IMG/VR virus record: IMGVR_UViG_3300033997_000243
Coordinates: 124,001 to 188,000 of that record
Length of the DNA: 64,000 nt
Direction: 5' to 3' (one strand)
Under the pieces are notes generated by a model, which saw only the letters and a program-made list of their open reading frames with translations, was not told the DNA's origin and ran no database searches. The translations under genes were made by a program, and so were the position numbers. Positions 40,077-55,446 of the stretch are shown here, in pieces. Every line of letters starts with the position of its first letter. The first letter of the stretch is position 1.

Positions 40077-40088
40077 TGATTATCTCGC

Positions 40089-40184: not shown

Positions 40185-40195
40185 ATCTTTCCCTT

Positions 40196-40206
40196 TGATT
40201 TACAGT
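40196..40206 (-). promoter_or_regulatory. ACTGTAAATCA intergenic motif, copy 3
   Basis: Exact 11-mer immediately after the stop. Confidence 0.55.
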
Positions 40207-40812
40207 TTAGGTCTTTACTACATTTTCGTCATGTGCTGGAATTGAAGTCCAAATGCCAGTAATAACTTTTGAAGCACGATCAGTATAAATCACTGAAAGC
40301 CGATCTGTCTTTTTGCTGCACTTACGTTCCAGCATTTTAAACGGATTCAGCTTGGTGACATCATTTAGTTCGTGTAGATTTACCAAAACTTCTATACGTG
40401 CATCAAACTTTGTACACAGCTTTAAATCTACGTGCAGCGCAACAACCGGAAATTCGTGAGCGTCAAAGGATCTTGTTTTGGCTGTTACAGAATAACTGAC
40501 CTCTTTAATAACACGATCAATCCATTGAACCGCAATCCCACTTTCTACAACAGGCAAATGTACTGTAAGACTAAACTTAACTTTAGCACTCAAACTTTGC
40601 ATGTACTTAAGAATACGGTTTTGTTTTTCCAGTAGATCAACAGTGTTCTCGTACACACGTTTTTGGTACTGCATAAAATCAGAATCGAGTTTATGCCACT
40701 CAGCAGTCCCACAACCACATGAAGCAAAAGGCGCTGCAATTTCATGTTGGATAAGTTGATTGCAGGTTGTACATACACCAACACGCTTTAAAACACTTTG
40801 TATATCTTCCAT
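40207..40812 (-). CDS. hypothetical protein with N-terminal Zn ribbon
   Basis: CTTC...CGC. Confidence 0.8.
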   Translation of the reverse strand: MEDIQSVLKRVGVCTTCNQLIQHEIAAPFASCGCGTAEWHKLDSDFMQYQKRVYENTVDLLEKQNRILKYMQSLSAKVKFSLTVHLPVVESGIAVQWIDRVIKEVSYSVTAKTRSFDAHEFPVVALHVDLKLCTKFDARIEVLVNLHELNDVTKLNPFKMLERKCSKKTDRLSVIYTDRASKVITGIWTSIPAHDENVVKT

Positions 40813-40813
40813 T

Positions 40814-41032
40814 TTAATTCGCCTTATTTCTGTTGTCTTTTATTTCAAAACGGTTTCTACCTGACTCAATATCCTCCAACACTTCTTTAAGTGCCTTTAC
40901 TTCTTCAAGATCTTTGAGTGGGAAATAAATACCGTCCTTACCAATAACAAACTTTCCGTTTGCTTTCTTCCAACCAATTTCTGCCATAAGATTACCAATC
41001 AGTAATAGGTCTTTTAGGATTTTCTTTGACAA
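40814..41032 (-). CDS. hypothetical protein
   Basis: Tiles; may start at MAEIG (40987). Confidence 0.65.
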   Translation of the reverse strand: MSKKILKDLLLIGNLMAEIGWKKANGKFVIGKDGIYFPLKDLEEVKALKEVLEDIESGRNRFEIKDNRNKAN

Positions 41033-42074
41033 TAGGAGTTAGCTTGAACTTTACTTCATTCGTATTTCTGCGTAAGTTAACTTCAATTTCAAAATAGGCT
41101 AAATATATCAAATCTCCCAAATGGAAATATACTTGCGCTCTTTCTATATGAGAAAATGACTGATCTTCGTGTGCAACTTTTTCATAAGCAACTGAAGGCA
41201 GACTAAATACAAACCTTTTATAGCCCATCGGATGCACGTTAATAGGTAAAGCAATTTCTCGCTTTTCCAGATAATCCAGATAACAAAACCAAAAGCGTAC
41301 AAGGTCATAGTCACTAAAATAAATGTTATCGAACATTGCTTTTACGTGAGCGGTTGCTGTAGTAAAGTCTAAATGATCATAATCACGCGCTTTAGCACAC
41401 AGATCATTTACCTTACTACGGAAACAATTGGTAAAATATGACTGGCCTGTCAGCCAATGAAGCTTAGGGCTTCCCTCCACTTCTATCAAAGATTTTATAT
41501 CGACCACCGAATTGATAGTGCCTGTACTTACAAGCATTTGAGCTAGTAAGCTTTCCACCGTTTTCTGCAAAAATGTATCTGACTTGGCATCCATATGTTC
41601 GATAGCTTTTGAAGCCTCAGTCAGATTTATATCAACTGAATGCAATTTACGTTTTTGCTGGCGAGTTAAATTTTTACTAATAGAGTTTTTGTCAGTGTCC
41701 TCCATATAATAAATATCGCCAAACACACAAAGTTTCTTCAAGCAAAACCAAAACACTTCATCTACAATAGCGCCGTCCTCGAAAACAAATGAGATAGGTC
41801 TTTGGCTTTGCATGTGTATTGGAATAAAGAGCTTTTCACGATCAAGAAAAACAGTGGAAGTCTCTACATTAGATGAAGGCATCGAAACACTGAATGTAAT
41901 AGTGTCTCCATCCTCAGCTATTCCCATTTCCGCCCAAACATAAGTTGAGTTATCTGCCTGAGTTACTTTCGTAGTTAAATAAGATGCGTATCTGACACGC
42001 AATTCATCAACAATGCGATTTAAAATATGAAGCCACTCTTCTTCCAGAGCAAACAGCCGAATTATCTTTGACAT
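40992..42074 (-). CDS. hypothetical protein
   Basis: 360 aa; GGAG RBS. Confidence 0.9.
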   Translation of the reverse strand: MSKIIRLFALEEEWLHILNRIVDELRVRYASYLTTKVTQADNSTYVWAEMGIAEDGDTITFSVSMPSSNVETSTVFLDREKLFIPIHMQSQRPISFVFEDGAIVDEVFWFCLKKLCVFGDIYYMEDTDKNSISKNLTRQQKRKLHSVDINLTEASKAIEHMDAKSDTFLQKTVESLLAQMLVSTGTINSVVDIKSLIEVEGSPKLHWLTGQSYFTNCFRSKVNDLCAKARDYDHLDFTTATAHVKAMFDNIYFSDYDLVRFWFCYLDYLEKREIALPINVHPMGYKRFVFSLPSVAYEKVAHEDQSFSHIERAQVYFHLGDLIYLAYFEIEVNLRRNTNEVKFKLTPIVKENPKRPITDW

Positions 42075-42077
42075 AGA

Positions 42078-42542
42078 TTACTCCAATACTTTTATGAAAT
42101 CATTTATTCCGTCATGAATATATTTGACTTCAAAGCCTTTACGTAATAAAAATGTTTTCATTCTTTCGGAATTTTCTGCCTCAACAATCAAAGCTTCATA
42201 GCCAGCTTGTTTGACCATAACTTCAAGTTCGGCCAAAAAGTTTGTGAATATGCCTTGGCCGCGCATTTCCTCATACACATTAATGTGAGTTAAAGAAACG
42301 GCTTTTAGTCCACGACCTTTATACGCATTTTTACTGGTGCGTAAATACAGTGAAAAATTTTCTTCATGGAACCAGCTTTCCGCAGGAAGAACTGAATCCA
42401 GATTTGAAGTCAAAAACTTTTTAATAGCTTCCATAGGAGCCTCACTTGTTTTTGGTTCGGAAATTATCTCCACTTCACGCGAAGTACCATCTTCAAGGAT
42501 TAGTTTAGTTCCTTCGTGTCCAGCATATAGTTTAGCTTTCAT
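42078..42542 (-). CDS. GNAT family N-acetyltransferase
   Basis: LTHINVYEEMRGQGIFTNFL (motif A) ... RMKTFLLRKGF (motif B). Confidence 0.8.
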   Translation of the reverse strand: MKAKLYAGHEGTKLILEDGTSREVEIISEPKTSEAPMEAIKKFLTSNLDSVLPAESWFHEENFSLYLRTSKNAYKGRGLKAVSLTHINVYEEMRGQGIFTNFLAELEVMVKQAGYEALIVEAENSERMKTFLLRKGFEVKYIHDGINDFIKVLE

Positions 42543-43194
42543 CTTTAACCTTGACATCAGGAAAATCGTCGGAGAAACTTTGGTAAATTTTATCGCCAAC
42601 AATATTCAGTGTTGTTGTATGTGCAAAGAATCCACCACCTTCATTTTGTGAAGTAAGCAAAAAAGCATGAGCAGAGAAACTTTTATGCGCTGTGTAGTCT
42701 ATGCAAGTTTTAACCATGCGGCCAGTTGCATCACAATAAATTTCGGCAAAATGTTTTATCAGATCGCAAATACGAAGTCTATGCGCTCCAACTTCAACCA
42801 TCTGATGAACAAAAGTTTCGATTGTACTTACATGAATTTCACGAACAATCGCGGTACATAAAACTTCTTTTTCTTCACCGACCGTAATCTGCATTGCCCA
42901 AAAATTGGCAAGTTTTTCCATTTCTTTTTGTGTCGGTTCACTCAACAACAAAGCACTGATTCTTAATGCGCTTCTTTTATTGAATTCGAGATCCTGAATG
43001 TAGGGCAAATGAATTTTTTCAAAGAAAGCAGCCAAGTCAACGCGAGCTTCCTGAACTATTTTCATTTCATCAGTTAATAAACCGCCAGTTGCATCTATAT
43101 CACGATAGCCAGCAATTGGAGTATTGACCTGCTTAAGCTGTTGAATAAAATGTGCGATTAGTCGCAGTTGAACTTCTTGTTTGGTTTCTAACAT
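42532..43194 (-). CDS. hypothetical protein
   Basis: AAGGAG RBS. Confidence 0.85.
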   Translation of the reverse strand: MLETKQEVQLRLIAHFIQQLKQVNTPIAGYRDIDATGGLLTDEMKIVQEARVDLAAFFEKIHLPYIQDLEFNKRSALRISALLLSEPTQKEMEKLANFWAMQITVGEEKEVLCTAIVREIHVSTIETFVHQMVEVGAHRLRICDLIKHFAEIYCDATGRMVKTCIDYTAHKSFSAHAFLLTSQNEGGGFFAHTTTLNIVGDKIYQSFSDDFPDVKVKDES

Positions 43195-43209
43195 AACAAA
43201 CTCCTTAAA

Positions 43210-44547
43210 TTAATGTTTCTTTTCGTTGTCGTGTGCGGCTTTGTGATCTTCTGGACTCAAGGCTACGATACTACCAAAAGAAGTATCAGTCAGTGCAAGA
43301 CCAGATGAATCGAACTCAAAATCTGAATAATGGAAAACATTTTCATTATCCAGATGAATTAATTTGGCACCCGAAAAAGTTGCATTACGCTCAAGAATAT
43401 ACTGTTTGAAATGTTCGTTAATCTCTACAGGCACAGATTCAAGTTCGTAACGAGCTTTCTTTAGAGCAGCTGATTCGTCATAAAATATTTCTGAGTGCTC
43501 TAAAATCAGTTTCGCCGCACGAAATATAAAATACATTTGAGAAGTTGACTGATCCGTATTAGCTAAAACGTGATTCAATTTAGCCTGAATGTGTGGGAAG
43601 GCAGAATCATGTACCAAAACATCAAGCACATAATTCTCGTTAAACGCACAGGTAAACTTAACAACGGTAAAACGATTAAGGCGCTCCAGATCTTCCGCAA
43701 ACTTTTTGTCCTGTTCTTCCGAGCGTTTTGGTTCGCCAGACATCATTTGATTAAATTTAACTTCAGCTAATTCATCTTGAGAACGAAACAAACGGCTTTT
43801 ATCTTGACCGACTCGCGTAGCCCAATCACTAGCTTCTATCAAGGCATCAACAGTAACTCCGCCTTCTGGATTTACTTCAGCTTTGTAGGACAGGCCATCC
43901 AACTTTACATTCACGTTATCGTGATAAACTGAAATAGAATCTTCACGAGTTACAATACGTAAAGCAAAATCTACTTCATCTGTACTTATTGGAAATTTGT
44001 TTGCATTCCAGTGCCGAATAAAACTTGTCTCAGTTTCAGAATCTAAATATTCAAGTTCGGTCAGGTGCTTGATTACAGACTGTTGATCACACGAATACAC
44101 ATAGTAAGAAAGTTGTAGTAATTTTTCAGATAAACTGTCACGAGTTAACTTGCTTTCCAGTAAAGAGGCCAGTTTATTCGCATCAATAACGAATAAAACT
44201 TTATCAACCTTGTGATCAAAGTCCAGACGAATAAGTTGAACTTTACACAAACGAGTAGATAATGACAATTCATACAAAGTGTTTTCCGGTATGTATTCTA
44301 TTTCACCGTAAACATCTGATCCGTTAGGAAGCATACTATCAATGCGTAACGCAGATTCGACTTGAGGCCGCCAATCGCTAACCTGACTTTCATCGAAGTT
44401 TGTCATGGAAATAACGCGAGTCGCTATCCCATGCGCCAATAAAAGAGCAGAGTATAATTCAGCGTTACGTTGGTACGATTCTTCTAATTCGGCTTTTAGT
44501 GCTTGGTTAAAATCTGTTTTGAGTGCGTCAATTATTTTTGTCATCAT
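43210..44547 (-). CDS. hypothetical protein
   Basis: 445 aa; AGGAG RBS. Confidence 0.9.
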   Translation of the reverse strand: MMTKIIDALKTDFNQALKAELEESYQRNAELYSALLLAHGIATRVISMTNFDESQVSDWRPQVESALRIDSMLPNGSDVYGEIEYIPENTLYELSLSTRLCKVQLIRLDFDHKVDKVLFVIDANKLASLLESKLTRDSLSEKLLQLSYYVYSCDQQSVIKHLTELEYLDSETETSFIRHWNANKFPISTDEVDFALRIVTREDSISVYHDNVNVKLDGLSYKAEVNPEGGVTVDALIEASDWATRVGQDKSRLFRSQDELAEVKFNQMMSGEPKRSEEQDKKFAEDLERLNRFTVVKFTCAFNENYVLDVLVHDSAFPHIQAKLNHVLANTDQSTSQMYFIFRAAKLILEHSEIFYDESAALKKARYELESVPVEINEHFKQYILERNATFSGAKLIHLDNENVFHYSDFEFDSSGLALTDTSFGSIVALSPEDHKAAHDNEKKH

Positions 44548-44553
44548 GTTCTC

Positions 44554-44976
44554 CTAAACTGTTTTTAAATCTGGTTGCGGCTCTACAACAACACTGTGTT
44601 CAAACAAAGCAATCTCACCTGTGTTTCCATCAATCAAGTTGCGTAGATATTCCATAGGAAATCGAATTTCACTATCGTTTGTTGTAATGACAATCATACC
44701 AGCTTGAGTAACTCGAACCTCAGTTGTTTTAGAGTCAACAGAAAAGATTGTAGGCCAATCGGTTTTTAATTCATTCGGAAGTTCGATCCTTGCGAAAATT
44801 TCGTAAGCAGGGCCGTGACCAGTAAAATGATCAAGTTTGACCTGCATACGCTTTCTGCCAACTAGCCTACTTTCGTGAGTGAATATACTTAGTTTGAATG
44901 GTCGTTTCTGCGCGTAGTAATTTGCAAATAACCATTCAAGCCGAGCAATCAACGACAAGCGGATAAGGCTGGCCAT
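44554..44976 (-). CDS. hypothetical protein
   Basis: Tiles. Confidence 0.8.
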   Translation of the reverse strand: MASLIRLSLIARLEWLFANYYAQKRPFKLSIFTHESRLVGRKRMQVKLDHFTGHGPAYEIFARIELPNELKTDWPTIFSVDSKTTEVRVTQAGMIVITTNDSEIRFPMEYLRNLIDGNTGEIALFEHSVVVEPQPDLKTV

Positions 44977-45597
44977 TTATGATTGCTCAACAACATCAGA
45001 AGATTCAACAATTTCCCAAACCAAACATTTGATAGAGGAAGTAGAAGTTTTTCTTTCCTCAATATGACTAACAACATTCTTGCCCGTCACTTGTTTGAAT
45101 TCGGTAACAACACGATCAATAATAGCCTGAAGTCTTGGCCACTCAGGACTTTCCTGCGCTTTCGTTTTACCACTGGCCAGTACAAGAACTCCAGAAATTT
45201 CGGATAAAAATTTTGGCAGATACATATAGCTGAATGTTAGACCACGCGCCAAAGTTTCAACATGAAAGGCATCGGCATCGTGTTTTGGATCTTCAATCAA
45301 CTTTTTGTCCCAGTCGTCAAGAACCCACTCTAATCCAGATTCATAAGGCGAGTATTCCATGTAAGTTTTATCGCAGGTAAATTTATTACCAAATTCATCT
45401 AATGCGATATACGCTGGATGCAAACCATCGGGACTTATTACTTCGGTCACAGTGATTTGACGGAAAAGAATTTGTTCGATGTCGTAGTAATCAGGTTTCG
45501 GACGGTTAAAGAAAATATCCAGTTCTTTTTGTTTCGTTTGAAGATTGGTAAGAACAAAACCAATGATCCAAATTTGTTGACCTACAGTGTATTTCAT
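44977..45597 (-). CDS. hypothetical protein
   Basis: GAGG RBS. Confidence 0.85.
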   Translation of the reverse strand: MKYTVGQQIWIIGFVLTNLQTKQKELDIFFNRPKPDYYDIEQILFRQITVTEVISPDGLHPAYIALDEFGNKFTCDKTYMEYSPYESGLEWVLDDWDKKLIEDPKHDADAFHVETLARGLTFSYMYLPKFLSEISGVLVLASGKTKAQESPEWPRLQAIIDRVVTEFKQVTGKNVVSHIEERKTSTSSIKCLVWEIVESSDVVEQS

Positions 45598-45995
45598 TCT
45601 ATGTACCTCGGTAGTTTGAACACAGACCAGAAATTTGAGGCTGGTACTGTAAAAGTTAAAATGCGCTCATGCGTAGAATCAGTTAATTCGCCAGCAAAGT
45701 AGTTTGCAAGTTCCGCCAACACAACATCAGTTTTAAAACGAAAACTACAAAGCAACATGCCACGATATTCATCACTAACACAACAAATAGATATGGCCCA
45801 ATACCTGTTATTGTGTTGCATTGCATTGCGACAAACTCTTTCAAGATCGTCTGGATTTTCAACAACAGTAAAGGGGAACCAGAATTCTGGACGTAAGCCG
45901 TCAGAAAACATTTTCATTATTTTGGGCCATGATCCATAGTTAAAACATACTTCTTTTGCTTTAACGGCCTTAGAAAAGAGTGTTTCGCAGTCCAT
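45594..45995 (-). CDS. hypothetical protein
   Basis: GAGGA RBS. Confidence 0.8.
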   Translation of the reverse strand: MDCETLFSKAVKAKEVCFNYGSWPKIMKMFSDGLRPEFWFPFTVVENPDDLERVCRNAMQHNNRYWAISICCVSDEYRGMLLCSFRFKTDVVLAELANYFAGELTDSTHERILTFTVPASNFWSVFKLPRYIE

Positions 45996-46007
45996 TCTGT
46001 TTTCCTC

Positions 46008-47087
46008 TCAAGAATTCTTCCTAGATTTTGCTTCCCAGTACAAGCGAACAGAATCTAATGTTGTCAAATGGCTTATGCTGGTTACGTTTGGCGACACAGT
46101 ATAAACGATTTTGGTAAGACCGTGAATACCTTGCTTTCTGTTTTGTGCATCTGATTGAGTAACCTGTTCAATTATGTCTTGACACAATCTTTCGGCCAGT
46201 TTTGTATTATCTACATTCAAAAGAATGGTACGAGTTTCATAATCAAGATGCGCTGAATCGCCCTCTACATACAAAACATTTTCATATTCAAATGTCCATC
46301 CGTACAAAGCCAGTTCCGCACGAAAAGTTTCCATGCGAGATTTTCTTAAAGTTTGCAAAATACTGTTGTCAGGTTTCTTACTCAATTCTGGCCGCTTAGA
46401 TCTTAATGCCACAGCTTCGGGATTTGTAAACAATCTCTCAGCCGGAATCTTTTTCATCAACTTTAAATAAGTCTCTAAGAGTTCTCTTTCTTCACCATAA
46501 GATTCCATTTTAAATTCAATTTTCTTGATCTCAGATTTTAAAAGAGATTCAAAAGACATCAGTGAAGGTGGCTTAAGTTTTTTGAACTCCCTTTGCACAC
46601 TTTTCGACAAACGAATAGATCCTACAGGAACAATGCTTGATATGTTGTGTTCACTTTCCGGCTTCTTAGATGAATTCGTCAATCGCATTGCATAAACATT
46701 GATAATATCTTTGTTTACATGAGACTTGCATGGAGACTGCATTCCTAAAACTTCGCACAATGTTTCTTGCAGCAAATCTACTTCATCAGTTGGTGAAACA
46801 TCTTTACTCAATGCTTCCCAATAAGACTTAGATTCTGCTTCACTTAATCTTAAAATAAATGGCGTTAAAAAGTCCACACCATCTTCTTCATTGACAATTT
46901 GCACTGCCTCGCAGTAAGTTCTAAGTTTTCCGGTTTTGATCTTTGCTTCTTCAGCATTGACCGCAACATAAATTTCTTTCTTATCTGATCCAGCTAAGAC
47001 TTTTACCCAAAGAACTTGCTGTTCTAAAGGGCTTCGCATTCCAACCAAAACAATTTCTTCGTCCTTGGTACAGTTTATACCGCGCAT
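46008..47087 (-). CDS. hypothetical protein (C-terminal domain shared with 62729..63166)
   Basis: LALYGWTFEY...AHLDYETRTILLN. Confidence 0.9.
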   Translation of the reverse strand: MRGINCTKDEEIVLVGMRSPLEQQVLWVKVLAGSDKKEIYVAVNAEEAKIKTGKLRTYCEAVQIVNEEDGVDFLTPFILRLSEAESKSYWEALSKDVSPTDEVDLLQETLCEVLGMQSPCKSHVNKDIINVYAMRLTNSSKKPESEHNISSIVPVGSIRLSKSVQREFKKLKPPSLMSFESLLKSEIKKIEFKMESYGEERELLETYLKLMKKIPAERLFTNPEAVALRSKRPELSKKPDNSILQTLRKSRMETFRAELALYGWTFEYENVLYVEGDSAHLDYETRTILLNVDNTKLAERLCQDIIEQVTQSDAQNRKQGIHGLTKIVYTVSPNVTSISHLTTLDSVRLYWEAKSRKNS

Positions 47088-47096
47088 AAGTTACCT

Positions 47097-47582
47097 CTAA
47101 AGCTTATCCAGAATTGAATCGTATGGATATTGTTTTTTAAGTTCGACTGTATTCCACGGAACACAGCGCAAAGAACATTCTGGAATAGGTGGATCACTTT
47201 CATGAAACATCAGATCACCTATGACCCGTAATCTTTGATTGTGGTGCTTTTGCCAATAACGAACTTCGCCAGTTGTTTTGTATTCTTCAATCGCACGTAT
47301 AGCCAAATCTACATTGGATAGACAATAACGATCTTCATAATCACCGCTGGTCAAGTGATCTACATAAAGAGCTGCATGTGCAATCAATTTACGAATGGTA
47401 AAAAGTCTGCCACTTACTACAGCAGCAAAACAAATATCAGGACTCAACACCAAAAGTTTTCGCAGTTCTTCTACTAATTCCTCGTAATTGTTGAACGCGA
47501 ATAAAGGCTGACTAAAAGCAATGGCTTCTGGATTCGGTGCAATTAACTGTAAACTTTTTGAAGCATCATATAAGACTATCAT
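47097..47582 (-). CDS. hypothetical protein
   Basis: GAGG RBS. Confidence 0.8.
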   Translation of the reverse strand: MIVLYDASKSLQLIAPNPEAIAFSQPLFAFNNYEELVEELRKLLVLSPDICFAAVVSGRLFTIRKLIAHAALYVDHLTSGDYEDRYCLSNVDLAIRAIEEYKTTGEVRYWQKHHNQRLRVIGDLMFHESDPPIPECSLRCVPWNTVELKKQYPYDSILDKL

Positions 47583-48040
47583 TCTACAACCCTCAAATGC
47601 GGTTTTGGTTTTGCCACTTCTTCAACTACTGGCTGATTTTCACCAATGAAAAGATTCATATCAACTTCAAAAGAAGCGCAAAGGCCAAGTGTAAGATCTT
47701 CTATTTGAAGAATGCAACCGATTGGTACTTTGAAATAACAAGGTGCTTTGTTTACTGATACGTAACCAATAACAAACTGATCGTCAATTATTAATTCTGG
47801 ACACGCATTTCGATGAATAAACACATGAAGAATTCCTTCACGATCTACAGTTGGATTAGCCATTAAACTTGGCGATATATCCAAATTCTTAGCAACCAGT
47901 ATGTCAGGTGCTGCTTGAGGATCTTCACCTGCGACAGCGGCTTTAATAAGAAAAGTCATTCGCACACGGCTTTTACCTGTACGAACAGAATCACAAATTT
48001 GCATTACGCGAGAAACTTTTGAGGATTGAAAAACATTCAT
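47579..48040 (-). CDS. sspB: SspB-like ClpXP protease adaptor
   Basis: EGILHVFIHRNACPELIIDDQFVIGYVSVNKAPCYFKVPIGCILQI...GLCASFE aligns with the SspB core; ends KPHLRVVE (ClpX-binding XB motif; E. coli RPALRVVK). Confidence 0.75.
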   Translation of the reverse strand: MNVFQSSKVSRVMQICDSVRTGKSRVRMTFLIKAAVAGEDPQAAPDILVAKNLDISPSLMANPTVDREGILHVFIHRNACPELIIDDQFVIGYVSVNKAPCYFKVPIGCILQIEDLTLGLCASFEVDMNLFIGENQPVVEEVAKPKPHLRVVE

Positions 48041-48041
48041 A

Positions 48042-48896
48042 TTAATTCCTTAATTCAGATAATGCCTTTGGTAATTGGCTGAGTAATGAACTAACAAATT
48101 CCAAAGTGTACACATTCAGAAGTTGTTCAAATTTTGTAATGCACCAGTTGTAGCGATCCATTTCATGCTGCCTAGATTGCTGGCTATAAATTTTAGTAGA
48201 TTGAGCCTCTACAGCATTTCGTTGGGCACACAACTTTAAAAGCTGTTCTCTATAAACAGAATCATCAAGATCAGCTGGTGTAGGTTGAGGCACTGTTTTA
48301 TTTAGTTTCTCAATCTTTTTGTTTATAAAGCGAACCTTGCCTTTTAAATAAGAGTAGAGTTTTCTGCGCGTATGGTAGCGAGTAACCGGAATGTTTTGGC
48401 AACCCTCTAACCTGAAGTCATTAACGATCATGTCAATAAGACCGTAGATAACTGCACGATTCATTTTAGCTGGAATACCGCAGATTTCATTTAACCGCAT
48501 TTGAATTGCAATTGCAGCCAATTCATTTTCTACTGGCTTAGTTGTTTTAACTGCGTTTACGTTACGATCAAAAACAAACTCAGTTGCAAGATCAAAAGCA
48601 AAGTTGTGAAAACCAAGACGCTTAGGTTTAACATGCAGAAAATGCAGTGCGTGACCTATCTCATGATTTACACTATCCAGATTGTAAGAGGAACTTGTTA
48701 TCAATAGTGGCAAAGTTCCATCACCTTGATAAGCCGATGTCCACGAAAATGTGAGATCAGGATATTTAGATTGAACAAGGGCAAGATGTTTTTCTCTTGC
48801 CTCTTTATTTTTATCATGATCCCAAATAACAGCATCTTCATACGCATCTTTGGCAATCCGTAGTTGATTGAGTTCTTCAAAAGTTGAAACGTACAT
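48042..48896 (-). CDS. putative HExxH zinc metallopeptidase-like protein
   Basis: VNHEIGHALH with downstream ENELAA (candidate third ligand). Confidence 0.55.
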   Translation of the reverse strand: MYVSTFEELNQLRIAKDAYEDAVIWDHDKNKEAREKHLALVQSKYPDLTFSWTSAYQGDGTLPLLITSSSYNLDSVNHEIGHALHFLHVKPKRLGFHNFAFDLATEFVFDRNVNAVKTTKPVENELAAIAIQMRLNEICGIPAKMNRAVIYGLIDMIVNDFRLEGCQNIPVTRYHTRRKLYSYLKGKVRFINKKIEKLNKTVPQPTPADLDDSVYREQLLKLCAQRNAVEAQSTKIYSQQSRQHEMDRYNWCITKFEQLLNVYTLEFVSSLLSQLPKALSELRN

Positions 48897-49273
48897 TAGA
48901 CTATCCTTCTAACAAACATTGCACCTAATTGCAGAATAGTGATAACAACCATAAGACTTGTAAAAATGTCAAAGATTCTTATCTCATGCCATTCAACATC
49001 TAATTGCTTTGTGAGTTTATCTAGCTGACCCGCAGCACATTCTTGAATTCTTTTGCGTCTGCTAAACAAATATTTTGTATTAAACCATGTTAATGCAGAC
49101 ACCAGAACAAGATAAATCATAATGCTGACGGTAAGCCAAGCATCCACAAAAAGTTTGCTAACTGTTTCGCGGCAAACTTCTGTATACAACAAAGCACAAC
49201 AAGTAACAGCTGCAAAACAGCCAAAAGCTTTTGCTATGGCTATTACTATGCTTTTATACCTTTCATAATCCAT
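48896..49273 (-). CDS. membrane protein
   Basis: Three TMs; start moved to MDYERY (AAGGAG). Confidence 0.8.
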   Translation of the reverse strand: MDYERYKSIVIAIAKAFGCFAAVTCCALLYTEVCRETVSKLFVDAWLTVSIMIYLVLVSALTWFNTKYLFSRRKRIQECAAGQLDKLTKQLDVEWHEIRIFDIFTSLMVVITILQLGAMFVRRIV

Positions 49274-49284
49274 AGCAATGCTCC

Positions 49285-50088
49285 TTAGAATTTTTCGAGG
49301 CGAGTCAGCCACTCTGCTTCTGGAAAACTAGCTGACGCTGGATTGTACGCATACATAACCAAAGTTTCAGTTGTGTTAGCTGTTAGCTTTACTATAAGGT
49401 AATCCCTTACAATAAAGTCGTCGGGTTCCCATGAAGCTTTAGTTTGATCTTCAATAATCAATTGAAAAACCAACCGGACTTCTTTCTGACCGTACTCCTC
49501 AAAGGCTTTAGATATGCACTTTGAATTTATGTCCTGCAATAGTTGGTTTGTTTTATCGTCAAACACATACAACTTCATGTTTTTTGAATTTCGGCAGGTA
49601 AAGGAACCTAACTTCAATGCTCTTTCTAAATACAGATAAAGCGTTCGTACTTCACGCAAAGAAGCACATTGATTCAGCACATGCTGCATAGCATTGCAGA
49701 ACGGCTCTGGATTCTTAGCGCTGATCATGCTCATAGTTTTTTCTATGGTCAAGTTCCATTCAGTGCCAGTCAATTCAGATTGATGTGTTTGAAACTTTTC
49801 TAACATCTTGAGTTTCTCACATTCTAATCTGAGATTTAACTTAAGATAGTTGTAGGCCATAGAAAGGGTTGGGCCATCGAAAATCTGATTTACAAACGAT
49901 TCAGTGAATACCGGATCTTTTGTTAAACTACCTATGATAGAATCCTTCATCAGCTTTTCTAACATTTGACGCTGTTCAGCTGTTTCAAGATCATTCATGC
50001 AGCTGATTAAAACTTTGGCGTCAACAACTTTTGTTATTTCTTCCAAAGCACGACTAATTAAAAACAGTATATCAAAACCTTTAGACAT
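49285..50088 (-). CDS. hypothetical protein (paralog of 25911..26744)
   Basis: HV.NQC...Y.ERA..LG and FEEYG..EV.LVF...D.T..SW..DD shared. Confidence 0.85.
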   Translation of the reverse strand: MSKGFDILFLISRALEEITKVVDAKVLISCMNDLETAEQRQMLEKLMKDSIIGSLTKDPVFTESFVNQIFDGPTLSMAYNYLKLNLRLECEKLKMLEKFQTHQSELTGTEWNLTIEKTMSMISAKNPEPFCNAMQHVLNQCASLREVRTLYLYLERALKLGSFTCRNSKNMKLYVFDDKTNQLLQDINSKCISKAFEEYGQKEVRLVFQLIIEDQTKASWEPDDFIVRDYLIVKLTANTTETLVMYAYNPASASFPEAEWLTRLEKF

Positions 50089-50100
50089 TTTTAATTCCCC

Positions 50101-50436
50101 TTAAAGAAATTTGCGTAGCCAGCGTTTAACACGGCTCACAACAATAGTTGGATCATAGCGACCTTCTGGCGGAAAGTTGTCGTTTATTAATCGCGTTAAA
50201 TATTCGGCCAACTTTTTGTCGGCAATTGGAACAGCTTTACTAAAGTCGTGAGCATCATGTTTGTACACAACACCTAAAGCGCAATTGTGTCTGGTAAATC
50301 TGTAGTGACTTAATCCGACACGTATGTAATAAAAATGCTCACCTAACCTCCGTTGAAATAAAATTCGGACGGTAAAAAGTTTGTAGATTAGACAAGCAAA
50401 CATCAAAACGATAAGTGTAAGAAATACATAGTCCAC
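50101..50436 (-). CDS. membrane-anchored protein (tandem paralog)
   Basis: TM then IRVGLSHY...KKLAEY...KRWLRKF. Confidence 0.8.
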   Translation of the reverse strand: MDYVFLTLIVLMFACLIYKLFTVRILFQRRLGEHFYYIRVGLSHYRFTRHNCALGVVYKHDAHDFSKAVPIADKKLAEYLTRLINDNFPPEGRYDPTIVVSRVKRWLRKFL

Positions 50437-50447
50437 TATAAAGTTCC

Positions 50448-50771
50448 TTACCAGTAAAATTTACGCAAGAAGCGTTTGGTCTTAGCTTGATCCGGCATCA
50501 CATCTTTAAAATGTGTGAACACTAAATCTATGACGTAGGTTTCCAACTTTTTGCTATCAACCAAAATTTCATCGTAGCAAAAATCATCATCTATTCGGTA
50601 AACAGAAAGATTCCCAGTTTCACTAGATCTGCGAATGACATAGTTCGACCAGCCTACACGAATGGTTAATGCACCAGTACGATCTTGATGCAAACAAACA
50701 CTTAATACTCTATACAGGCCAAGCACAAAAATAATGGCTGGAATAGATAAAGCAAAATACATTATATTCAT
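50448..50771 (-). CDS. membrane-anchored protein (tandem paralog)
   Basis: TM then IRVGWSNY...KKLETY...KRFLRKF. Confidence 0.8.
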   Translation of the reverse strand: MNIMYFALSIPAIIFVLGLYRVLSVCLHQDRTGALTIRVGWSNYVIRRSSETGNLSVYRIDDDFCYDEILVDSKKLETYVIDLVFTHFKDVMPDQAKTKRFLRKFYW

Positions 50772-51049
50772 TTGCTTACTCCAAGATTAAATTTGTGCAT
50801 GTGTTCTTTGGCCCAATGTCCTTGTGGAAAACCATTACTGATAACACAGGCCATAGTTGCTTCACAGAGAAAAACAAGGTCATCAAAATTTGCGGTTGTT
50901 GTTTTAGATTTGGCTGCAAGCGTGTATTCATGGATAACACCGTTTGCGTCCACAACATGGTTAATATTGACTTTGTGGTTATTCTGTTTTGCAATTACTT
51001 GCTTAAGCGCTTTTTGTTTTTCACTATAAAAGAAATAAAGGGTTTCCAT
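50768..51049 (-). CDS. hypothetical protein
   Basis: AAGGA RBS. Confidence 0.8.
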   Translation of the reverse strand: METLYFFYSEKQKALKQVIAKQNNHKVNINHVVDANGVIHEYTLAAKSKTTTANFDDLVFLCEATMACVISNGFPQGHWAKEHMHKFNLGVSK

Positions 51050-51557
51050 TTATCGTCCTTACATTTGATTCAAGTTTTTCTATGGCCGCGAAAAGTTTAT
51101 TCAGTTCAGCCACAATCTTTTTAACCTGAGCTTTAGTTTGTTTAATACTTTTGTCTGTATCAGGATACCAACTAATACTTTGACTACAGCAAGAAATTTT
51201 AAGGCCCAAACTAATTTCAATGGCTCCACGTTTCTTAAGGTAAGTAATCATGGAACCAGAGTAAGTGCTTGTTTCTGGATTTAACCAAGAACGTAAAGTA
51301 AATTCTTCATCTACTTTAGGATCTATATGAAGAAACCTATCCAACATAGTCAATACGATTTTAAGTTTGTTTTTAAAATCGGTTGAACAACAGCTTGGAT
51401 TTTTATCATCGCTGTGTATGTGAATAGTGTTGTTTCCATTGGTTAATTCAAAATATGCTTGAACACATTCTGTTGTGGCCCAAGCACTCCAACGAATTGC
51501 ATGAAAAGTTTTAGGATCTAACCATGCACGGTTTCTAATTGGCTCCATGTAACTCAT
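51024..51557 (-). CDS. hypothetical protein with internal duplication
   Basis: RAWLDP...helix and RSWLNP...helix. Confidence 0.8.
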   Translation of the reverse strand: MSYMEPIRNRAWLDPKTFHAIRWSAWATTECVQAYFELTNGNNTIHIHSDDKNPSCCSTDFKNKLKIVLTMLDRFLHIDPKVDEEFTLRSWLNPETSTYSGSMITYLKKRGAIEISLGLKISCCSQSISWYPDTDKSIKQTKAQVKKIVAELNKLFAAIEKLESNVRTINGNPLFLL

Positions 51558-51560
51558 AAA

Positions 51561-52406
51561 CTATTTAACCTCGAACACGTACAGTATAATGCAATGAGTT
51601 ACCACTGATAAAACAATGGCTACTAAATTCAACATCCGAGCTTTCAATAATTTTCGGCCCCATTCAGCAATTTTATCTGTTAGCAAAGTGCCTGAACTTG
51701 CCGAAAAACTTTGATAAGTTTCAGTTAACCAGAGTTTTATTCTGCGTTGATGAAGTTTTTCATGTATAAGGGTCGAGGCCACAAAAAATATGTTTAGTGA
51801 GAGCGTTAAGTAGATTGCCCAACTTTGTACTGTATAACCTAAATCCATCAAATTAGATCTGGCGTACACATAAACACATACCATAGTTAATATTGAAAGA
51901 TTACCAATAGCGTTCGCAAGTAAAACACGAGAAAGTGTCAACCAATTTTGATCGTTGTTCAACAATTCTTCTTTCAAACTTTTTGCGGTATCTGAAGAAT
52001 CACCTACGTTTTCAGAAGTCAAGTCAGCAGCTGTAACCGAATAGTTTGCTGAAATATTATGATTCTTTGTCACAGTCCACTTAGGTAGAAAGTTTTGGAA
52101 GTCGAATTTAATTCTGAAAAGATCAGCCGGACATCCTTTAAATTCGTAATGAACTGTGCTTCCACTTGCACCCGTAAAATTGCTGAATTTAAAGCAACCT
52201 AAAAACGTAAGCCAGAAAACTTTGTAGCCATGCTTTTTTAAATAGTCTTTCTTCAAACACACGTTACGCAACAGCACGAAAAACATTGTGCAGGATATTT
52301 TTAGGTAGTCCCACAGCCCCCACAGTAAAATGAATGCAACGAAGGCTACACACAACCAACCAAAGACCTGAACAAGTCCATCAACTAAAGCTAAAATGGT
52401 TTCCAT
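51561..52406 (-). CDS. multi-pass membrane protein
   Basis: Several TMs; AGAGGA RBS. Confidence 0.85.
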   Translation of the reverse strand: METILALVDGLVQVFGWLCVAFVAFILLWGLWDYLKISCTMFFVLLRNVCLKKDYLKKHGYKVFWLTFLGCFKFSNFTGASGSTVHYEFKGCPADLFRIKFDFQNFLPKWTVTKNHNISANYSVTAADLTSENVGDSSDTAKSLKEELLNNDQNWLTLSRVLLANAIGNLSILTMVCVYVYARSNLMDLGYTVQSWAIYLTLSLNIFFVASTLIHEKLHQRRIKLWLTETYQSFSASSGTLLTDKIAEWGRKLLKARMLNLVAIVLSVVTHCIILYVFEVK

Positions 52407-52427
52407 AATACTATCCTCTAAAAAGAT

Positions 52428-53060
52428 TTATTTAAGGTTTGCCGCGAACGTCAAACTATGCCGCTGGATTGCCTCAAGTGGCGTTGCTGCGTATGGCCCA
52501 ACATCAATACGTTCGTCAGTGTGAAGCATTGTTATTGTATGCCAGTAGCGATGATCTTCTTTCATTGGATCAGCATTCACCACCAGTTCTGCAATAAAAT
52601 CTTTGCAATACGCAACAGCAGAAATTTCAGAATCAGTTGCCTTTATTTTATATTGGGGGTATTGCAATACAAATTCAGCAAGCAACTCATCTGACTTTAA
52701 ATTTGCGACATCAAACTGCAAAGTTGGAAAAAGTTGTTTAAGAATTACATTACTTAGCTGAGATTTTCCTGCGTCAGACGTACCAGCAATGACCAACATT
52801 TCACCTCTACGCAAACCGCCGTTTACTACAACCTCACCACCGTACCATTCACCGAGCTTTTGGGCCAATGATTGCGGAGGAATACTTATGTCTGTTAAAG
52901 AAAGTCCATCGTTTTGTGGTGCAGGAATTGGCTCACCAATTTTTTCAAACATTTCCCGTGCTTGAGCCAAAGTAAGTTCATGCGTTGGCATATGAACAGC
53001 AGATTCAATATGTTTTGGCAAAGCAGTTCTTTTCACTTGTTTTTTAAGATGCGGTTTCAT
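52428..53060 (-). CDS. hypothetical protein with orphan DnaB/RecA-type Walker A segment
   Basis: GGLRRGEMLVIAGTSDAGKSQL; AGGAG RBS. Confidence 0.8.
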   Translation of the reverse strand: MKPHLKKQVKRTALPKHIESAVHMPTHELTLAQAREMFEKIGEPIPAPQNDGLSLTDISIPPQSLAQKLGEWYGGEVVVNGGLRRGEMLVIAGTSDAGKSQLSNVILKQLFPTLQFDVANLKSDELLAEFVLQYPQYKIKATDSEISAVAYCKDFIAELVVNADPMKEDHRYWHTITMLHTDERIDVGPYAATPLEAIQRHSLTFAANLK

Positions 53061-53069
53061 AATATTCTC

Positions 53070-53495
53070 CTATATTAAAATTCGACGATGCGGGTAGTAA
53101 CTCATTAAAATATTACCAGACCCGATTAAACCACTTACCGCAGATTTGATTTCGTACTTATCCCACAAACTTTTTGCAAACGCATCAACAATGAATATAG
53201 GTAAATGGTCTAACACAACATAATCATATTTACCTTGGTAAAATTCAGAGATCACATATTTGGCCGCATAGTTTAAGGCTGAACGTGCGTAAGGGCAATG
53301 ATCTTTTCCAGCGGCTGCCTCGAAAAGATCTTGAGTTAATATCTCTGGATTAACGGTCAAAACAAAACTTTCATTCATTGCCTTTCTGTTGGCTTCGCTT
53401 AAAAGTCCAGCACGATGTCCAGACTTTTCTATTGAGTAATGTGTATCACCAAACTCAGAAAGAAACAAAAAGTTTAACGTATTTATTAATTGCAT
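53070..53495 (-). CDS. hypothetical protein (paralog of 58186..58587)
   Basis: YDYVVLDHLPIFIV vs PDYVLVDGIPLFFV. Confidence 0.8.
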   Translation of the reverse strand: MQLINTLNFLFLSEFGDTHYSIEKSGHRAGLLSEANRKAMNESFVLTVNPEILTQDLFEAAAGKDHCPYARSALNYAAKYVISEFYQGKYDYVVLDHLPIFIVDAFAKSLWDKYEIKSAVSGLIGSGNILMSYYPHRRILI

Positions 53496-53556
53496 AATAT
53501 TCTCCTTTAAGAATTTTTGATTGCGTACACTAAAGTAATGTACGCTACAAACAAAC

Positions 53557-53985
53557 TTATTCGGTTTGAGAAGAAAGTTTCACCATTACAAAAGGAACTC
53601 CGCCGGGTAAACTGGAATTTCTTTCCCGTGGCGTTAAAGTCAGTAACTCAAGTGCAACGCCAAGACATACAAGTTGATCAACAATTCTTTGTTGGCCAGT
53701 CCAGAGCGCACCACTTTTATCAGCACACATATTCAGAAAAGTTTCACCTTCAGTTCTTCTGAAAGAATCATCCAGTTGATTTAACATATCAACAACAGAT
53801 TCTTTGTGGCCGCGACAACGCTCTGGATGAAAGCCAACTTTTGTGACAACACCTGAACCTAAAAGATAAGTGCCTTCTTCAAGAATTGGCCCTTTGTCAG
53901 CAACTTCCTCTCCACGAAAAAGAGAATCAAGAAAAATTGCTGTCACGTTTTCTGACGTAAGTTTCATTACATTTTGTTTGGTCAT
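53557..53985 (-). CDS. conserved hypothetical phage protein
   Basis: FHPER...MLNQL...F...TFLNMC.D..G..WTG pattern; GGAG RBS. Confidence 0.85.
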   Translation of the reverse strand: MTKQNVMKLTSENVTAIFLDSLFRGEEVADKGPILEEGTYLLGSGVVTKVGFHPERCRGHKESVVDMLNQLDDSFRRTEGETFLNMCADKSGALWTGQQRIVDQLVCLGVALELLTLTPRERNSSLPGGVPFVMVKLSSQTE

Positions 53986-53997
53986 ACATTTCTCCAA

Positions 53998-54309
53998 TTA
54001 ATCTTTTTTCCAATTACCATCAACGTAAGTGTAAGTACCTTCACCAACTTTGCAGTAAAAATCTAAGGCAGATATGGCTCCTTGGCCGTAACCTGCTTTG
54101 TTGCAAGCATCTGCAATAGTTGCACCCCTTACAACCTCTTTTTTACCACCAATAAAGTAAAGAGTGAATTCGTGAACGTCTGGCGTATTAGTCAGCACAA
54201 CAGCACGATCAATAACTTCCTGATCCACAACCAGAGTCACAGTTCCGTTAGCTTTATTAACGGTAAAAGTTGACGCCAGTATTTGCTTTAAAATTTCTTT
54301 TGCTTCCAT
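53998..54309 (-). CDS. conserved hypothetical phage protein
   Basis: FTLYF..GKKEVV.G.TIADA...AGYG.GA..ALDFY. Confidence 0.85.
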   Translation of the reverse strand: MEAKEILKQILASTFTVNKANGTVTLVVDQEVIDRAVVLTNTPDVHEFTLYFIGGKKEVVRGATIADACNKAGYGQGAISALDFYCKVGEGTYTYVDGNWKKD

Positions 54310-54342
54310 TTTGTTATCCTCTTTTTGTCAAGTACAATTGTT

Positions 54343-54382
54343 TTCATTGAGTACACTGAATGCAATGTACTCTAGTAAACAA
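54343..54382 (-). repeat. conserved post-stop hairpin, copy 4
   Basis: GAGUACA-UUGCAUUCAG-UGUACUC, 10 nt after the UAG; compensatory changes relative to copy 1. Confidence 0.6.
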
Positions 54383-54727
54383 CTATGCCAGCGGGTCATA
54401 GCCAAGGACGCCAACTCGTGCATCACGAACTTTTTCATCAGATCCATCTGCATAACGATCTGGTGATTCATCAGAAGTAAAATAATCGTAAAGCTTTTCA
54501 GCATCAACGATTGATCTCAGACCGAAAGAAAGATTTTCATCCTGACTTTCCAGCCAAGCGGTAATATCACTCATTCTTTCCGCAATGTTTACACGTTGTT
54601 TTGGTGACTGAGCAGCCCGAACTTTTTTCGCATCTGTTCCAGTCACATTGTCGATTGCATCCAAAGCAGATTGTTGAATTGCTTTGGCTTCTTCTTTCGT
54701 TGGTTTGCGAACTTTTTTATCGGACAT
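54383..54727 (-). CDS. hypothetical protein
   Basis: AAGGAG RBS. Confidence 0.85.
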   Translation of the reverse strand: MSDKKVRKPTKEEAKAIQQSALDAIDNVTGTDAKKVRAAQSPKQRVNIAERMSDITAWLESQDENLSFGLRSIVDAEKLYDYFTSDESPDRYADGSDEKVRDARVGVLGYDPLA

Positions 54728-54750
54728 ACATTGCTCTCCTTTAATAAAAA

Positions 54751-55314
54751 CTACTTTAAAAGTTTAATACGCTGATCTAAAAATGTTTGTAACACACCTT
54801 CGTCAGCCAATTCACAATAATCGTCATCGTACTCTGTTGGATTTAACGCTGAGATTAAAAGATCGTCAGTAAACTCCACTTTGAAAATATCCTGTTTATA
54901 AACAGCTGGAATTTCGCAACCTAGTATGTAAGACACACAGGTAACAACATTATGTCTTACGTACATAATCTGGAAGGAAAGAAGTTCTGAACATTCGTAA
55001 ATTGAACAGAGTTCTTTGTAAACTTTCAATCCAAAATTCAAAATGAAATCTGGCTGCCCAACAAAGTTCGGCATAGGTCTGTATATTCTTTTTACGTTCA
55101 ATGAAGCACTGGATTTTGAATCTTTAAGAAAACATTCGATTACAACTGGCAAAGTATCTACTTTGTTTTCTTTAAGCTTGCTGTTCCAGTCCTCTATAAA
55201 AAAGTCGGAATCTACAAATCTAGCTGCCGCATGTAAGTGACCGCTTTGATCATCCATGTCATCGATTTTAATAGTGAAAAGTTTGCGATTTATTGAGTTA
55301 GCTGAATTATTCAT
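54751..55314 (-). CDS. hypothetical protein
   Basis: Start moved to MNNSANS (AAGGT); first gene after promoter P3. Confidence 0.8.
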   Translation of the reverse strand: MNNSANSINRKLFTIKIDDMDDQSGHLHAAARFVDSDFFIEDWNSKLKENKVDTLPVVIECFLKDSKSSASLNVKRIYRPMPNFVGQPDFILNFGLKVYKELCSIYECSELLSFQIMYVRHNVVTCVSYILGCEIPAVYKQDIFKVEFTDDLLISALNPTEYDDDYCELADEGVLQTFLDQRIKLLK

Positions 55315-55445: not shown

Positions 55446-55446
55446 G

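What the first reader, a model, noticed from the sequence alone, without database searches (positions are those of the whole stretch)
47579..48040. Phage-encoded SspB-like ClpXP adaptor with intact XB tail but divergent substrate groove
Seen: SspB-like core and C-terminal KPHLRVVE. Known: SspB delivers ssrA-tagged proteins and RseA fragments to ClpX through its LRVVK tail. The N-terminal part differs strongly from the bacterial PYL.RA.Y.W helix. Inference: it may redirect host ClpXP to new substrates such as defence proteins or regulators, or compete with host SspB and alter sigmaE or tmRNA turnover.
Basis: partly seen in the sequence, partly recalled or inferred. Interest (0 to 1): 0.65.

Follow-up and report, generated by a model that had tools for sequence, protein, structure and literature searches.

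The report
Divergent jumbo-phage SspB-like ClpXP adaptor
An uncultivated 320-kb phage carries a very diverged copy of the bacterial SspB adaptor that keeps the tail used to dock on the host ClpX protease but has lost the conserved cargo-binding residues, so it probably feeds some other protein to the host's degradation machine; similar genes are already annotated in many jumbo phages but none has been tested.

Summary
ORF 47579..48040 (-) encodes 153 aa ending KPKPHLRVVE. It is a real gene: AAGGA ribosome site, dN/dS 0.14-0.17, intact in several metagenomes.

Pfam, PHROGs and BLAST see nothing. An exhaustive HMM search found seven relatives, all on jumbo-phage contigs and all ending in L-[RTS]-[VIL]-V-[KE].

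Three lines place it in the SspB fold:
- The family profile's top ten PDB hits are all SspB (best E 9e-4).
- hhalign against 29 bacterial and phage SspBs gives 98.2%, E 4e-14.
- The AlphaFold model (pLDDT 79.6) matches only SspB structures (Foldseek E 7.5e-6; Z 11.3-12.3, next Z 6.7).

The tail lies within natural XB variation; Pasteurellaceae SspBs end in SHLRIVD. The polar residues conserved in canonical SspB (Q50, N54, R75, Y94, R96, E97, N98) and the N-terminal PYLLRA..W motif are replaced by a different invariant set.

The phage encodes no ClpX or ClpP, so the target is most likely host ClpXP, with cargo other than ssrA. ClpX binding was not shown; the complex prediction gave no verdict.

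SspB-like genes are already annotated in 78 phage records (pf16 gp18, RAY gp39). This is therefore a divergent new variant of a known but uncharacterised kind.

The parts
47579..48040 (-). CDS of the SspB-like protein (153 aa plus stop), P0001
   Evidence: dN/dS is 0.14-0.17 against orthologues in L002 and L004. No indels in contigs from other samples.
47642..48040 (-). Folded SspB-like domain, residues 1-133 (N-terminal helix 3-20, then beta strands)
   Evidence: AF2 model pLDDT 79.6, pTM 0.71. Foldseek top 19 PDB hits are all SspB. VIA-align Z 11.3-12.3 to SspB, next Z 6.7. The Atlas nearest cluster is PF04386.
47660..47842 (-). Stretch with sequence-level homology to SspB (residues 67-127 aligned to E. 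coli SspB 47-107)
   Evidence: hhalign 96.4%, E 1e-9 and 98.2%, E 4e-14. PDB profile search 8et3_Y E 9e-4.
47606..47641 (-). Short disordered acidic linker, residues 134-145
   Evidence: pLDDT under 50 from residue 135. The distance from the conserved Phe to the XB Leu is 24 residues, against a median of 46 (range 28-64) in 23 bacterial SspBs.
47582..47605 (-). XB-type ClpX-docking tail KPHLRVVE, residues 146-153
   Evidence: Conserved at the C-terminus of all 8 family members. It matches bacterial tails RPALRVVK, RPHLTVVK and SHLRIVD and phage tails KKPTLTVVK and KKPTLRVVK. HLRVVE is unchanged in strain variants, while the residues just before it vary.
48047..48051 (-). Shine-Dalgarno AAGGA, 6 nt before the ATG; the stop codon of the upstream gene lies 1 nt before the ATG
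47097..47582 (-). Downstream 161-aa gene; its start overlaps the stop of the SspB-like gene (ATGA). Conserved partner of unknown function, motif DRYC...GE..YWQKHHN
   Evidence: The pair is kept in L002 and L004. It is also kept in the distant phage G001/L007: partner 35-39% identical, E 1e-29, while the SspB-like genes are 30% identical. No Pfam, PHROG or PDB hit.
48042..48896 (-). Upstream 284-aa gene with an HEIGH motif; syntenic only in the close relatives
   Evidence: No Pfam, PHROG or PDB hit.

Best explanation
The gene encodes a highly diverged SspB-family adaptor made by a jumbo phage. Shown: it has the SspB fold, followed by a short disordered linker and a C-terminal XB-type peptide (HLRVVE). 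Inferred: the XB peptide docks on the zinc-binding N-domain of the host's ClpX, as the LRVVK tail of bacterial SspB does, because the phage has no ClpX or ClpP of its own. Inferred: the folded domain no longer reads the ssrA tag, because the residues that bacterial SspBs conserve on their groove and dimer surfaces are replaced by a different, family-specific invariant set. It would instead bind another protein and tether it to ClpXP for degradation. That protein could be a host protein or a phage protein; the translationally coupled, co-conserved 161-aa neighbour is one candidate. Occupying the ClpX N-domains would at the same time compete with host adaptors.
For: Fold and homology. Tail: conserved in all 8 family members at 21-88% identity, inside the natural range of bacterial XB tails including acidic last residues, shared with other phage SspB homologues, and unique among 398 ORFs of the phage. 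The domain is under purifying selection (dN/dS 0.14-0.17) with its own invariant residues F4 R25 S56 L59 C80 P81 G92 F103 P106 F124, which argues that it binds something. Of 24 canonical positions conserved at 80% or more in the aligned half, only G49, I51, L53, A59, P86, G99 and F104 are kept; Q50, N54, F72, R75, F76, Y94, R96, E97 and N98 are not. In bacterial SspB only the dimer interface and the ssrA groove are highly conserved (PMC9963277). The phage has no ClpX zinc-binding domain, ClpP or ClpX-type AAA module above cut-off and no tmRNA. The XB peptide binds the ClpX N-domain wherever it sits in a polypeptide, SspB works with ClpX of bacteria that lack it, and tethering alone can drive degradation of an untagged target (PMC12373786).
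Against: No binding to ClpX was demonstrated; the one complex prediction gave no verdict. The host, and so its ClpX, is unknown. The last residue is E, not K or D. The linker is shorter than in any of the 23 bacterial SspBs measured, which could limit delivery geometry. Loss of ssrA binding is inferred from conservation, not from contact maps, which I could not retrieve. Dimerisation, needed for efficient delivery by E. coli SspB, is untested, and the canonical helix motif is absent. No cargo is identified.
Confidence: 0.55

Rival explanations
1. Decoy or anti-adaptor. The protein mainly occupies the ClpX N-domains with its XB tails. This blocks host SspB, RssB-type adaptors and N-domain-dependent substrates, and so protects phage proteins or rewires host proteolysis, without delivering any cargo itself.
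For: The tail is the best conserved recognisable functional element. The linker is very short, which may be poor for hand-off to the pore but is no obstacle to docking. Substrate-free SspB competing at ClpX is discussed as a real issue in PMC9963277.
Against: A decoy needs only a tail, perhaps on a dimeric scaffold. Here the whole 130-residue domain is under purifying selection and has surface-type invariant residues of its own. The conserved gene pair with the 161-aa neighbour suggests a specific partner.
Confidence: 0.2
2. Functional equivalent of host SspB. It still binds ssrA-tagged (or RseA-like) peptides and boosts clearance of stalled-translation products during infection.
For: Same fold and same tail. 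Less diverged phage homologues such as pf16 gp18 (52% identical to E. coli SspB) keep the canonical motifs.
Against: N54 is invariant in 29 canonical sequences but is F/F/L/N/C/S/S/K in this family. The FNARF and YAREN motifs and the PYLLRA..W helix motif are gone. Arg is absent at both positions (R71 and R75 equivalents) that could correspond to the affinity-lowering 'R73Q' of the optogenetics literature (PMC12304284; the numbering there is ambiguous).
Confidence: 0.1
3. An SspB-fold protein with a function unrelated to ClpX, for example a small Sm-like or beta-barrel binding module; the tail resemblance has no functional meaning.
For: Binding is unproven. Xanthomonas jumbo-phage SspB homologues lack an XB tail altogether, so the fold can exist in phages without it.
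Against: The motif sits at the exact C-terminus after a disordered basic/acidic linker in every family member, despite 21-30% identity elsewhere. It matches the bacterial consensus position by position.
Confidence: 0.1

Closest known systems
Bacterial SspB (E. coli b3228; Pfam PF04386; PDB 1OX9, 1OU9, 8ET3) and alphaproteobacterial SspB (PDB 2QAS/2QAZ, 2NYS)
   Same: Same fold over ~105 residues (Z 11.3-12.3, rmsd 2.7-3.1 A). Profile-profile homology over the C-terminal half of the domain. Same architecture of folded domain, disordered linker and C-terminal L-R-V-V-x peptide.
   Different: About 12-16% identity. Below Pfam detection. Canonical conserved groove and dimer residues are not kept. 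The linker is about half the bacterial median. The last residue is E. It is encoded by a phage.
Erwinia phage RAY gp039, 'putative SspB-like ClpXP adaptor' (PMC10299810), and its homologues in Agricanvirus and phiKZ-like phages
   Same: Jumbo-phage-encoded SspB-fold proteins of ~150 aa. RAY gp39 ends KKPTLTVVK, the same tail type as this family's distant members, which end PHLTVVK or PTLTVVK. Function untested; RAY gp039 is cytoplasmic.
   Different: RAY gp39 is recognisable by BLAST from E. coli SspB (30% identity, E 1e-8). The present family is not: tblastn with three members (P0001, P0006, P0007) against 50,697 phage records finds nothing. The phage lineage differs too: the terminase is nearest the Dickeya JA11 / Erwinia Y3 group at 40%.
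Pseudomonas phage pf16 gp18, 'stringent starvation protein B' (PMC5587285)
   Same: Phage-encoded SspB with a shortened linker (24 residues from the conserved Phe to the XB Leu, the same as here) and an XB tail KKPTLRVVK.
   Different: pf16 gp18 is 52% identical to E. coli SspB and keeps the canonical motifs. It looks like a recent host acquisition that probably still reads ssrA/RseA. The present protein is an old, re-tooled lineage.
Bacillus phage SPO1 Gp53, a phage adaptor-like modulator of ClpCP (from my own knowledge, not checked here)
   Same: Concept: a phage protein that docks on a host Clp unfoldase and alters substrate choice.
   Different: Different protease (ClpCP) and unrelated fold.

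Membership tests
SspB (Pfam PF04386) | Match to the Pfam SspB model above the gathering score (27 bits) | tested here: not met
   No hit at E<=1 for P0001. No match in the whole phage genome at E<=10. Relatives P0005 and P0007 score 12.7 and 13.6 bits.
SspB (Pfam PF04386) | Remote sequence homology to SspB by profile methods | tested here: met
   Family profile against PDB: the top 10 hits are all SspB, best E 9e-4. hhalign 96.4%, E 1e-9 and 98.2%, E 4e-14.
SspB (Pfam PF04386) | SspB fold: N-terminal helix packed on a small beta barrel or sandwich | tested here: met
   AF2 pLDDT 79.6. Foldseek: 19 SspB chains at the top, E 7.5e-6 to 1.4e-3, next hit E 0.07. VIA-align Z 11.3-12.3 against 6.7 for the next hit. 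Atlas: PF04386 cluster, TM 0.59.
SspB (Pfam PF04386) | C-terminal ClpX-binding (XB) peptide L-[RTK]-[VIL]-[VIL]-[KD] after a disordered linker | tested here: met
   HLRVVE forms the last six residues (148-153). The consensus was derived from 78 bacterial SspBs. The only departure is E as the last residue.
SspB (Pfam PF04386) | Conserved ssrA-groove and dimer-interface residues (P11 Y12 L13 L14 R15 A16 W20 N24 Q50 N54 F72 R75 F76 Y94 R96 E97 N98 in E. coli numbering) | tested here: not met
   Conservation in 29 non-redundant SspBs, mapped through the hhalign register. Only G49, I51, L53, A59, P86, G99 and F104 have conserved counterparts.
SspB (Pfam PF04386) | Binds the ClpX N-terminal zinc-binding domain | tested here: inconclusive
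   Complex prediction with the E. coli ClpX 1-60 dimer and residues 116-153 scored 0.11; the tool's verdict was 'no answer'.
SspB (Pfam PF04386) | Homodimer; stimulates ClpXP degradation of bound cargo | not testable with these tools
   Needs biochemistry.
Phage-encoded SspB-like proteins (as annotated in RAY, pf16, phiKZ-like phages) | SspB-fold protein encoded by a (mostly jumbo) phage | tested here: met
   The genome is a 319,518-bp virus record with terminal repeats and carries a phage terminase and tail genes. BFVD fold search finds about 21 phage proteins at probability 0.99 or more, including the annotated SspBs.

The most novel reading that the evidence does not exclude
This is a natural 'degrader'. 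An old phage lineage kept the SspB scaffold and the ClpX-docking tail but rebuilt the cargo groove, so that a specific host protein (a defence or stress regulator) or the co-encoded 161-aa partner is handed to host ClpXP. That would be the first phage adaptor that re-targets ClpXP.
Probability: 0.3. Interest if true: 0.75.

Novelty: new variant of a known kind. Interest (0 to 1): 0.45.

Why it matters
How phages manipulate host AAA+ proteases is poorly known. SspB-like genes recur in jumbo phages (78 records; about 21 BFVD models), but none has a demonstrated function.

This clade is the clearest case where the docking tail is kept while the canonical cargo-reading residues are replaced. That is the signature expected of a re-targeted adaptor rather than a borrowed host gene. 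It offers a small (153 aa), easily expressed protein for asking what a phage sends to, or keeps away from, ClpXP. It is also a natural counterpart to engineered XB-based degraders (PMC12373786).

It also shows that Pfam-based annotation undercounts this class.

Tried and rejected
- **Family searches on P0001 alone:** Pfam, PHROGs and PDB phmmer found nothing.
- **Phage record searches:** megablast of the region and tblastn of P0001, P0006 and P0007 against 50,697 phage records gave no match.
- **First AF2 run:** with only 3 close sequences it gave pLDDT 46 and was unusable. It was replaced by the 8-sequence run.
- **The search for related loci:** With the closer alignment, or with P0004 alone, it returned only records already known.
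- **Complex prediction:** E. coli ClpX 1-60 x2 plus Zn with residues 116-153 scored 0.11 and 0.10. The verdict was 'no answer'; this counts neither for nor against binding.
- **The search for homologous proteins with E. coli SspB:** the 120 proteins listed were almost all close Enterobacteriaceae relatives, useless for a diverse profile.
- **Neighbours:** profile-against-PDB searches for the 161-aa partner and the 284-aa upstream gene found nothing. The protein atlas gave no usable lead for the partner or the 140-aa ORF.
- **Promoter/terminator scan:** counts were no higher than in shuffles.
- **Residue-level ssrA contacts:** the original structure papers are not in the library, so loss of the groove rests on conservation. 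The optogenetics papers give R73Q and A56V/A58V with ambiguous numbering.
- **The 'SspB' in the restriction-modification review (PMC12707154):** this is an unrelated phosphorothioate protein.
- **Host:** not identified. There are only a habitat label (subsurface, wastewater) and the terminase neighbours.

Full report
**1. The observation**

The minus-strand ORF 47579..48040 encodes 153 residues ending ...EEVAKPKPHLRVVE. An AAGGA ribosome site lies 6 nt before the ATG. The upstream gene's stop codon is 1 nt before the ATG, and the gene's own stop overlaps the start of the next gene (ATGA). Against its two close orthologues (88% and 71% identical), dN/dS is 0.14-0.17. Contigs from other samples carry the gene without indels. 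It is a real, selected gene.

**2. Genome context**

- The window is bases 124,001-188,000 of a 319,518-bp IMG/VR virus record with 127-bp exact terminal repeats, 37.6% G+C and one tRNA.
- All genes in the window lie on the minus strand, and almost none has a Pfam or PHROG match.
- Elsewhere the genome has a large terminase, tail proteins and an SbcC-like nuclease.
- The terminase is about 40% identical to those of Dickeya phage JA11, Erwinia phages Y3 and Yoloswag, and related jumbo phages of Pseudomonadota.
- The DNA occurs in subsurface and, in part, wastewater metagenomes.
- The host is unknown. A Gram-negative host is the best guess.
- The phage has no ClpX zinc-binding domain, no ClpP and no ClpX-type AAA module above cut-off, and no tmRNA.

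**3. Is it SspB-like?**

Direct searches fail. These covered Pfam SspB, PHROGs, PDB phmmer and tblastn against 50,697 phage records.

The word-indexed search found only two close relatives. That tool is length-limited, so I also ran an exhaustive HMMER search of 1.84 billion representatives. It added five distant relatives of 146-165 aa at 21-32% identity. All the relatives whose contigs are long enough to judge lie in dense one-strand arrays of unknown genes; one is a 286.6-kb virus record. That record's terminase is 64% identical to this phage's.

Three independent lines place the family in SspB:
- **Sequence profile against PDB.** The ten best chains are all SspB, best 8et3_Y at E 9e-4. HMMER also lines up the tail with RPALRVVK.
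- **Profile-profile comparison.** hhalign gives 96.4%, E 1e-9 against E. coli plus six phage SspBs. It gives 98.2%, E 4e-14 against 29 non-redundant bacterial and phage SspBs built from a genome scan. Residues 67-127 align to E. coli 47-107.
- **Structure.** With the 8-sequence alignment, AlphaFold2 gives pLDDT 79.6 and pTM 0.71: a fold over residues 1-133 and a disordered tail from 135. Foldseek's first 19 PDB hits are all SspB (E 7.5e-6 to 1.4e-3), and the next hit has E 0.07. The Foldseek-independent aligner gives Z 11.3-12.3, rmsd 2.7-3.1 A over 104-108 residues to the four SspB representatives, then Z 6.7 for generic Sm-like barrels. The ESM Atlas search returns only PF04386 clusters.

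**4. The tail**

All eight family members end in L-[RTS]-[VIL]-V-[KE], preceded by K/R-rich residues: HLRVVE, HLRIVE, NLTLVK, HLTLVK, HLTVVK, MLSVVK and TLTVVK.

I extracted 78 bacterial SspBs. Their tails read RPALRVVK, RPSLRVVK, KPTLTVVK, RGHLTLVK and RPHLTVVK. In Pasteurellaceae they read SHLRIVD or SHLRILD. The phage tail, acidic last residue included, therefore lies inside natural variation.

Only one of 398 ORFs of this phage ends in such a motif. In strain variants, the residues just before HLRVVE change while the motif does not.

The linker is short. It spans 24 residues from the conserved Phe to the XB Leu, against a median of 46 (range 28-64) in bacteria. This matches phage pf16 gp18.

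**5. The cargo surface**

In bacterial SspB only the dimer interface and the ssrA groove are strongly conserved (PMC9963277). In my 29-sequence set, the positions conserved at 80% or more include P11 Y12 L13 L14 R15 A16 W20 D23 N24 in the helix. They also include D48 G49 Q50 I51 L53 N54 A59 F72 A74 R75 F76 G78 P86 Y94 A95 R96 E97 N98 G99 G101 F104.

Through the hhalign register, the phage family keeps only G49, I51, L53, A59, P86, G99 and F104, which are core or turn positions. N54 is invariant in canonical SspB but reads F/F/L/N/C/S/S/K here. The FNARF and YAREN motifs are gone. The N-terminal helix is present in the model but has an unrelated sequence.

The family has its own invariant set: F4 R25 S56 L59 C80 P81 G92 F103 P106 F124.

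I could not obtain residue-level ssrA contacts from the literature held, so 'groove changed' is an inference from conservation.

**6. Mechanism**

Best explanation (confidence 0.55): an adaptor that docks by its XB tail on the N-domain of host ClpX and presents a cargo other than ssrA. As a side effect it competes with host adaptors.

Established knowledge supports this as feasible. The XB peptide alone binds and activates ClpX wherever it sits in a chain, SspB works with ClpX of species that lack it, and mere tethering can drive degradation of an untagged target (PMC12373786).

Steps shown: fold, homology, tail motif and its conservation, selection, and absence of a phage ClpXP.

Steps inferred: ClpX binding, loss of ssrA reading, and the existence of a cargo.

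The one complex prediction allowed returned no verdict and is not used as evidence.

Rivals:
- A pure decoy of the ClpX N-domain (0.2).
- A functional equivalent of host SspB (0.1).
- An SspB-fold protein unrelated to ClpX (0.1).

**7. Conserved neighbour**

The 161-aa gene that overlaps the stop codon is 99%, 76% and 35% identical in the phages whose SspB-like proteins are 88%, 71% and 30% identical. It stays adjacent in all of them. It has no recognisable family. It is a candidate partner or cargo. This is speculation.

**8. Comparison with what is known**

E. coli SspB finds matches in 78 phage records by tblastn. Most are jumbo phages of Pseudomonas, Erwinia, Ralstonia and Xanthomonas, many already annotated 'SspB-like'. 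BFVD holds about 21 phage models with this fold.

| Phage protein | Length | C-terminus |
|---|---|---|
| RAY gp39 | 150 aa | KKPTLTVVK |
| pf16 gp18 | 128 aa | KKPTLRVVK |
| Ralstonia FLC4-3B homologue | 135 aa | GFLSVVK |
| PA7 homologue | 302 aa | KLTVIK followed by GGKK |
| Xanthomonas RTH11 and LucasX homologues | 179 and 188 aa | no XB tail |

pf16 gp18 was discussed as a possible competitor of host SspB at RseA (PMC5587285). RAY gp039 was shown to be cytoplasmic (PMC10299810). I found no functional study.

The present clade differs in four ways. It is undetectable by Pfam or BLAST. It is known only from metagenomic jumbo phages, with eight sequences among 1.84 billion representatives. 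It has lost the canonical conserved surface. It keeps the tail. I therefore rate it a new variant of a known, uncharacterised kind, with interest 0.45.

**9. Limits**

- The host is unknown.
- Binding is untested.
- The alignment behind the model has only eight sequences.
- The N-terminal half is matched to SspB by structure only.

Noticed in passing
window 44554..44976 (-): A 140-aa ORF 2.6 kb downstream may be a second, tail-less SspB-like protein. Its C-terminal 'FPMEYLRNLIDGNTGEIALFEH' matches family member P0006 (BLASTP E 2e-7). It is the only other ORF of the phage hit by the family HMM (E 1e-3); hhalign gives 69% over 31 residues. Its N-terminus 'IARLEWLFAN' recalls the canonical 'LRAFYEWLLDN'. 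It ends ...EPQPDLKTV. No fold could be obtained: the Atlas model has pLDDT 0.39. Close relative L002 has an HTH_3 gene at this place instead.
   Followed up: partly
window 47097..47582 (-): The 161-aa neighbour is more conserved than the SspB-like gene (99% against 88% with L002). It carries a striking invariant block, DRYC...AIE..GE..YWQKHHN..LR, and has no known family.
   Followed up: partly
window 48042..48896 (-): The 284-aa upstream gene contains an invariant HEIGH (HExxH, zincin-like) motif. It has no Pfam, PHROG or PDB match and is syntenic only in the close relatives.
   Followed up: partly
window 1..64000: The whole 64-kb window is one co-directional array of about 100 minus-strand genes. 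Of 16 genes scanned against Pfam and PHROGs, including the ten largest, only 12177..13325 matched a family, phrog_2087 of unknown function.
   Followed up: no
L012:1495-2031 and L015:1453-2016 (Xanthomonas phages RTH11, LucasX): These jumbo-phage SspB homologues lack an XB tail. They share a different C-terminal motif, DFRA(P/R)RKP(K/S)S, which may be another docking peptide.
   Followed up: no
L011:1471-2376 (Pseudomonas phage PA7): The phiKZ-like SspB homologue is 302 aa with a roughly 190-residue insertion. Its XB-like KLTVIK is followed by GGKK, so it is not at the extreme C-terminus.
   Followed up: no
BFVD hits A0A1W6DXU6 and A0A1W6DY71 (Aeromonas phage phiA8-29): One phage appears to carry two SspB-fold proteins. 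This parallels the possible pair in this window.
   Followed up: no
window 47600..47615: In the strain in run X4, six substitutions cluster in the codons just upstream of HLRVVE (P145 and P147 change, as in L002), while the motif itself is unchanged.
   Followed up: yes
L005:8568-9107: The contig carrying distant relative P0007 has a gene with a cREC_REC (PF20274) domain three genes upstream of the SspB-like gene.
   Followed up: no
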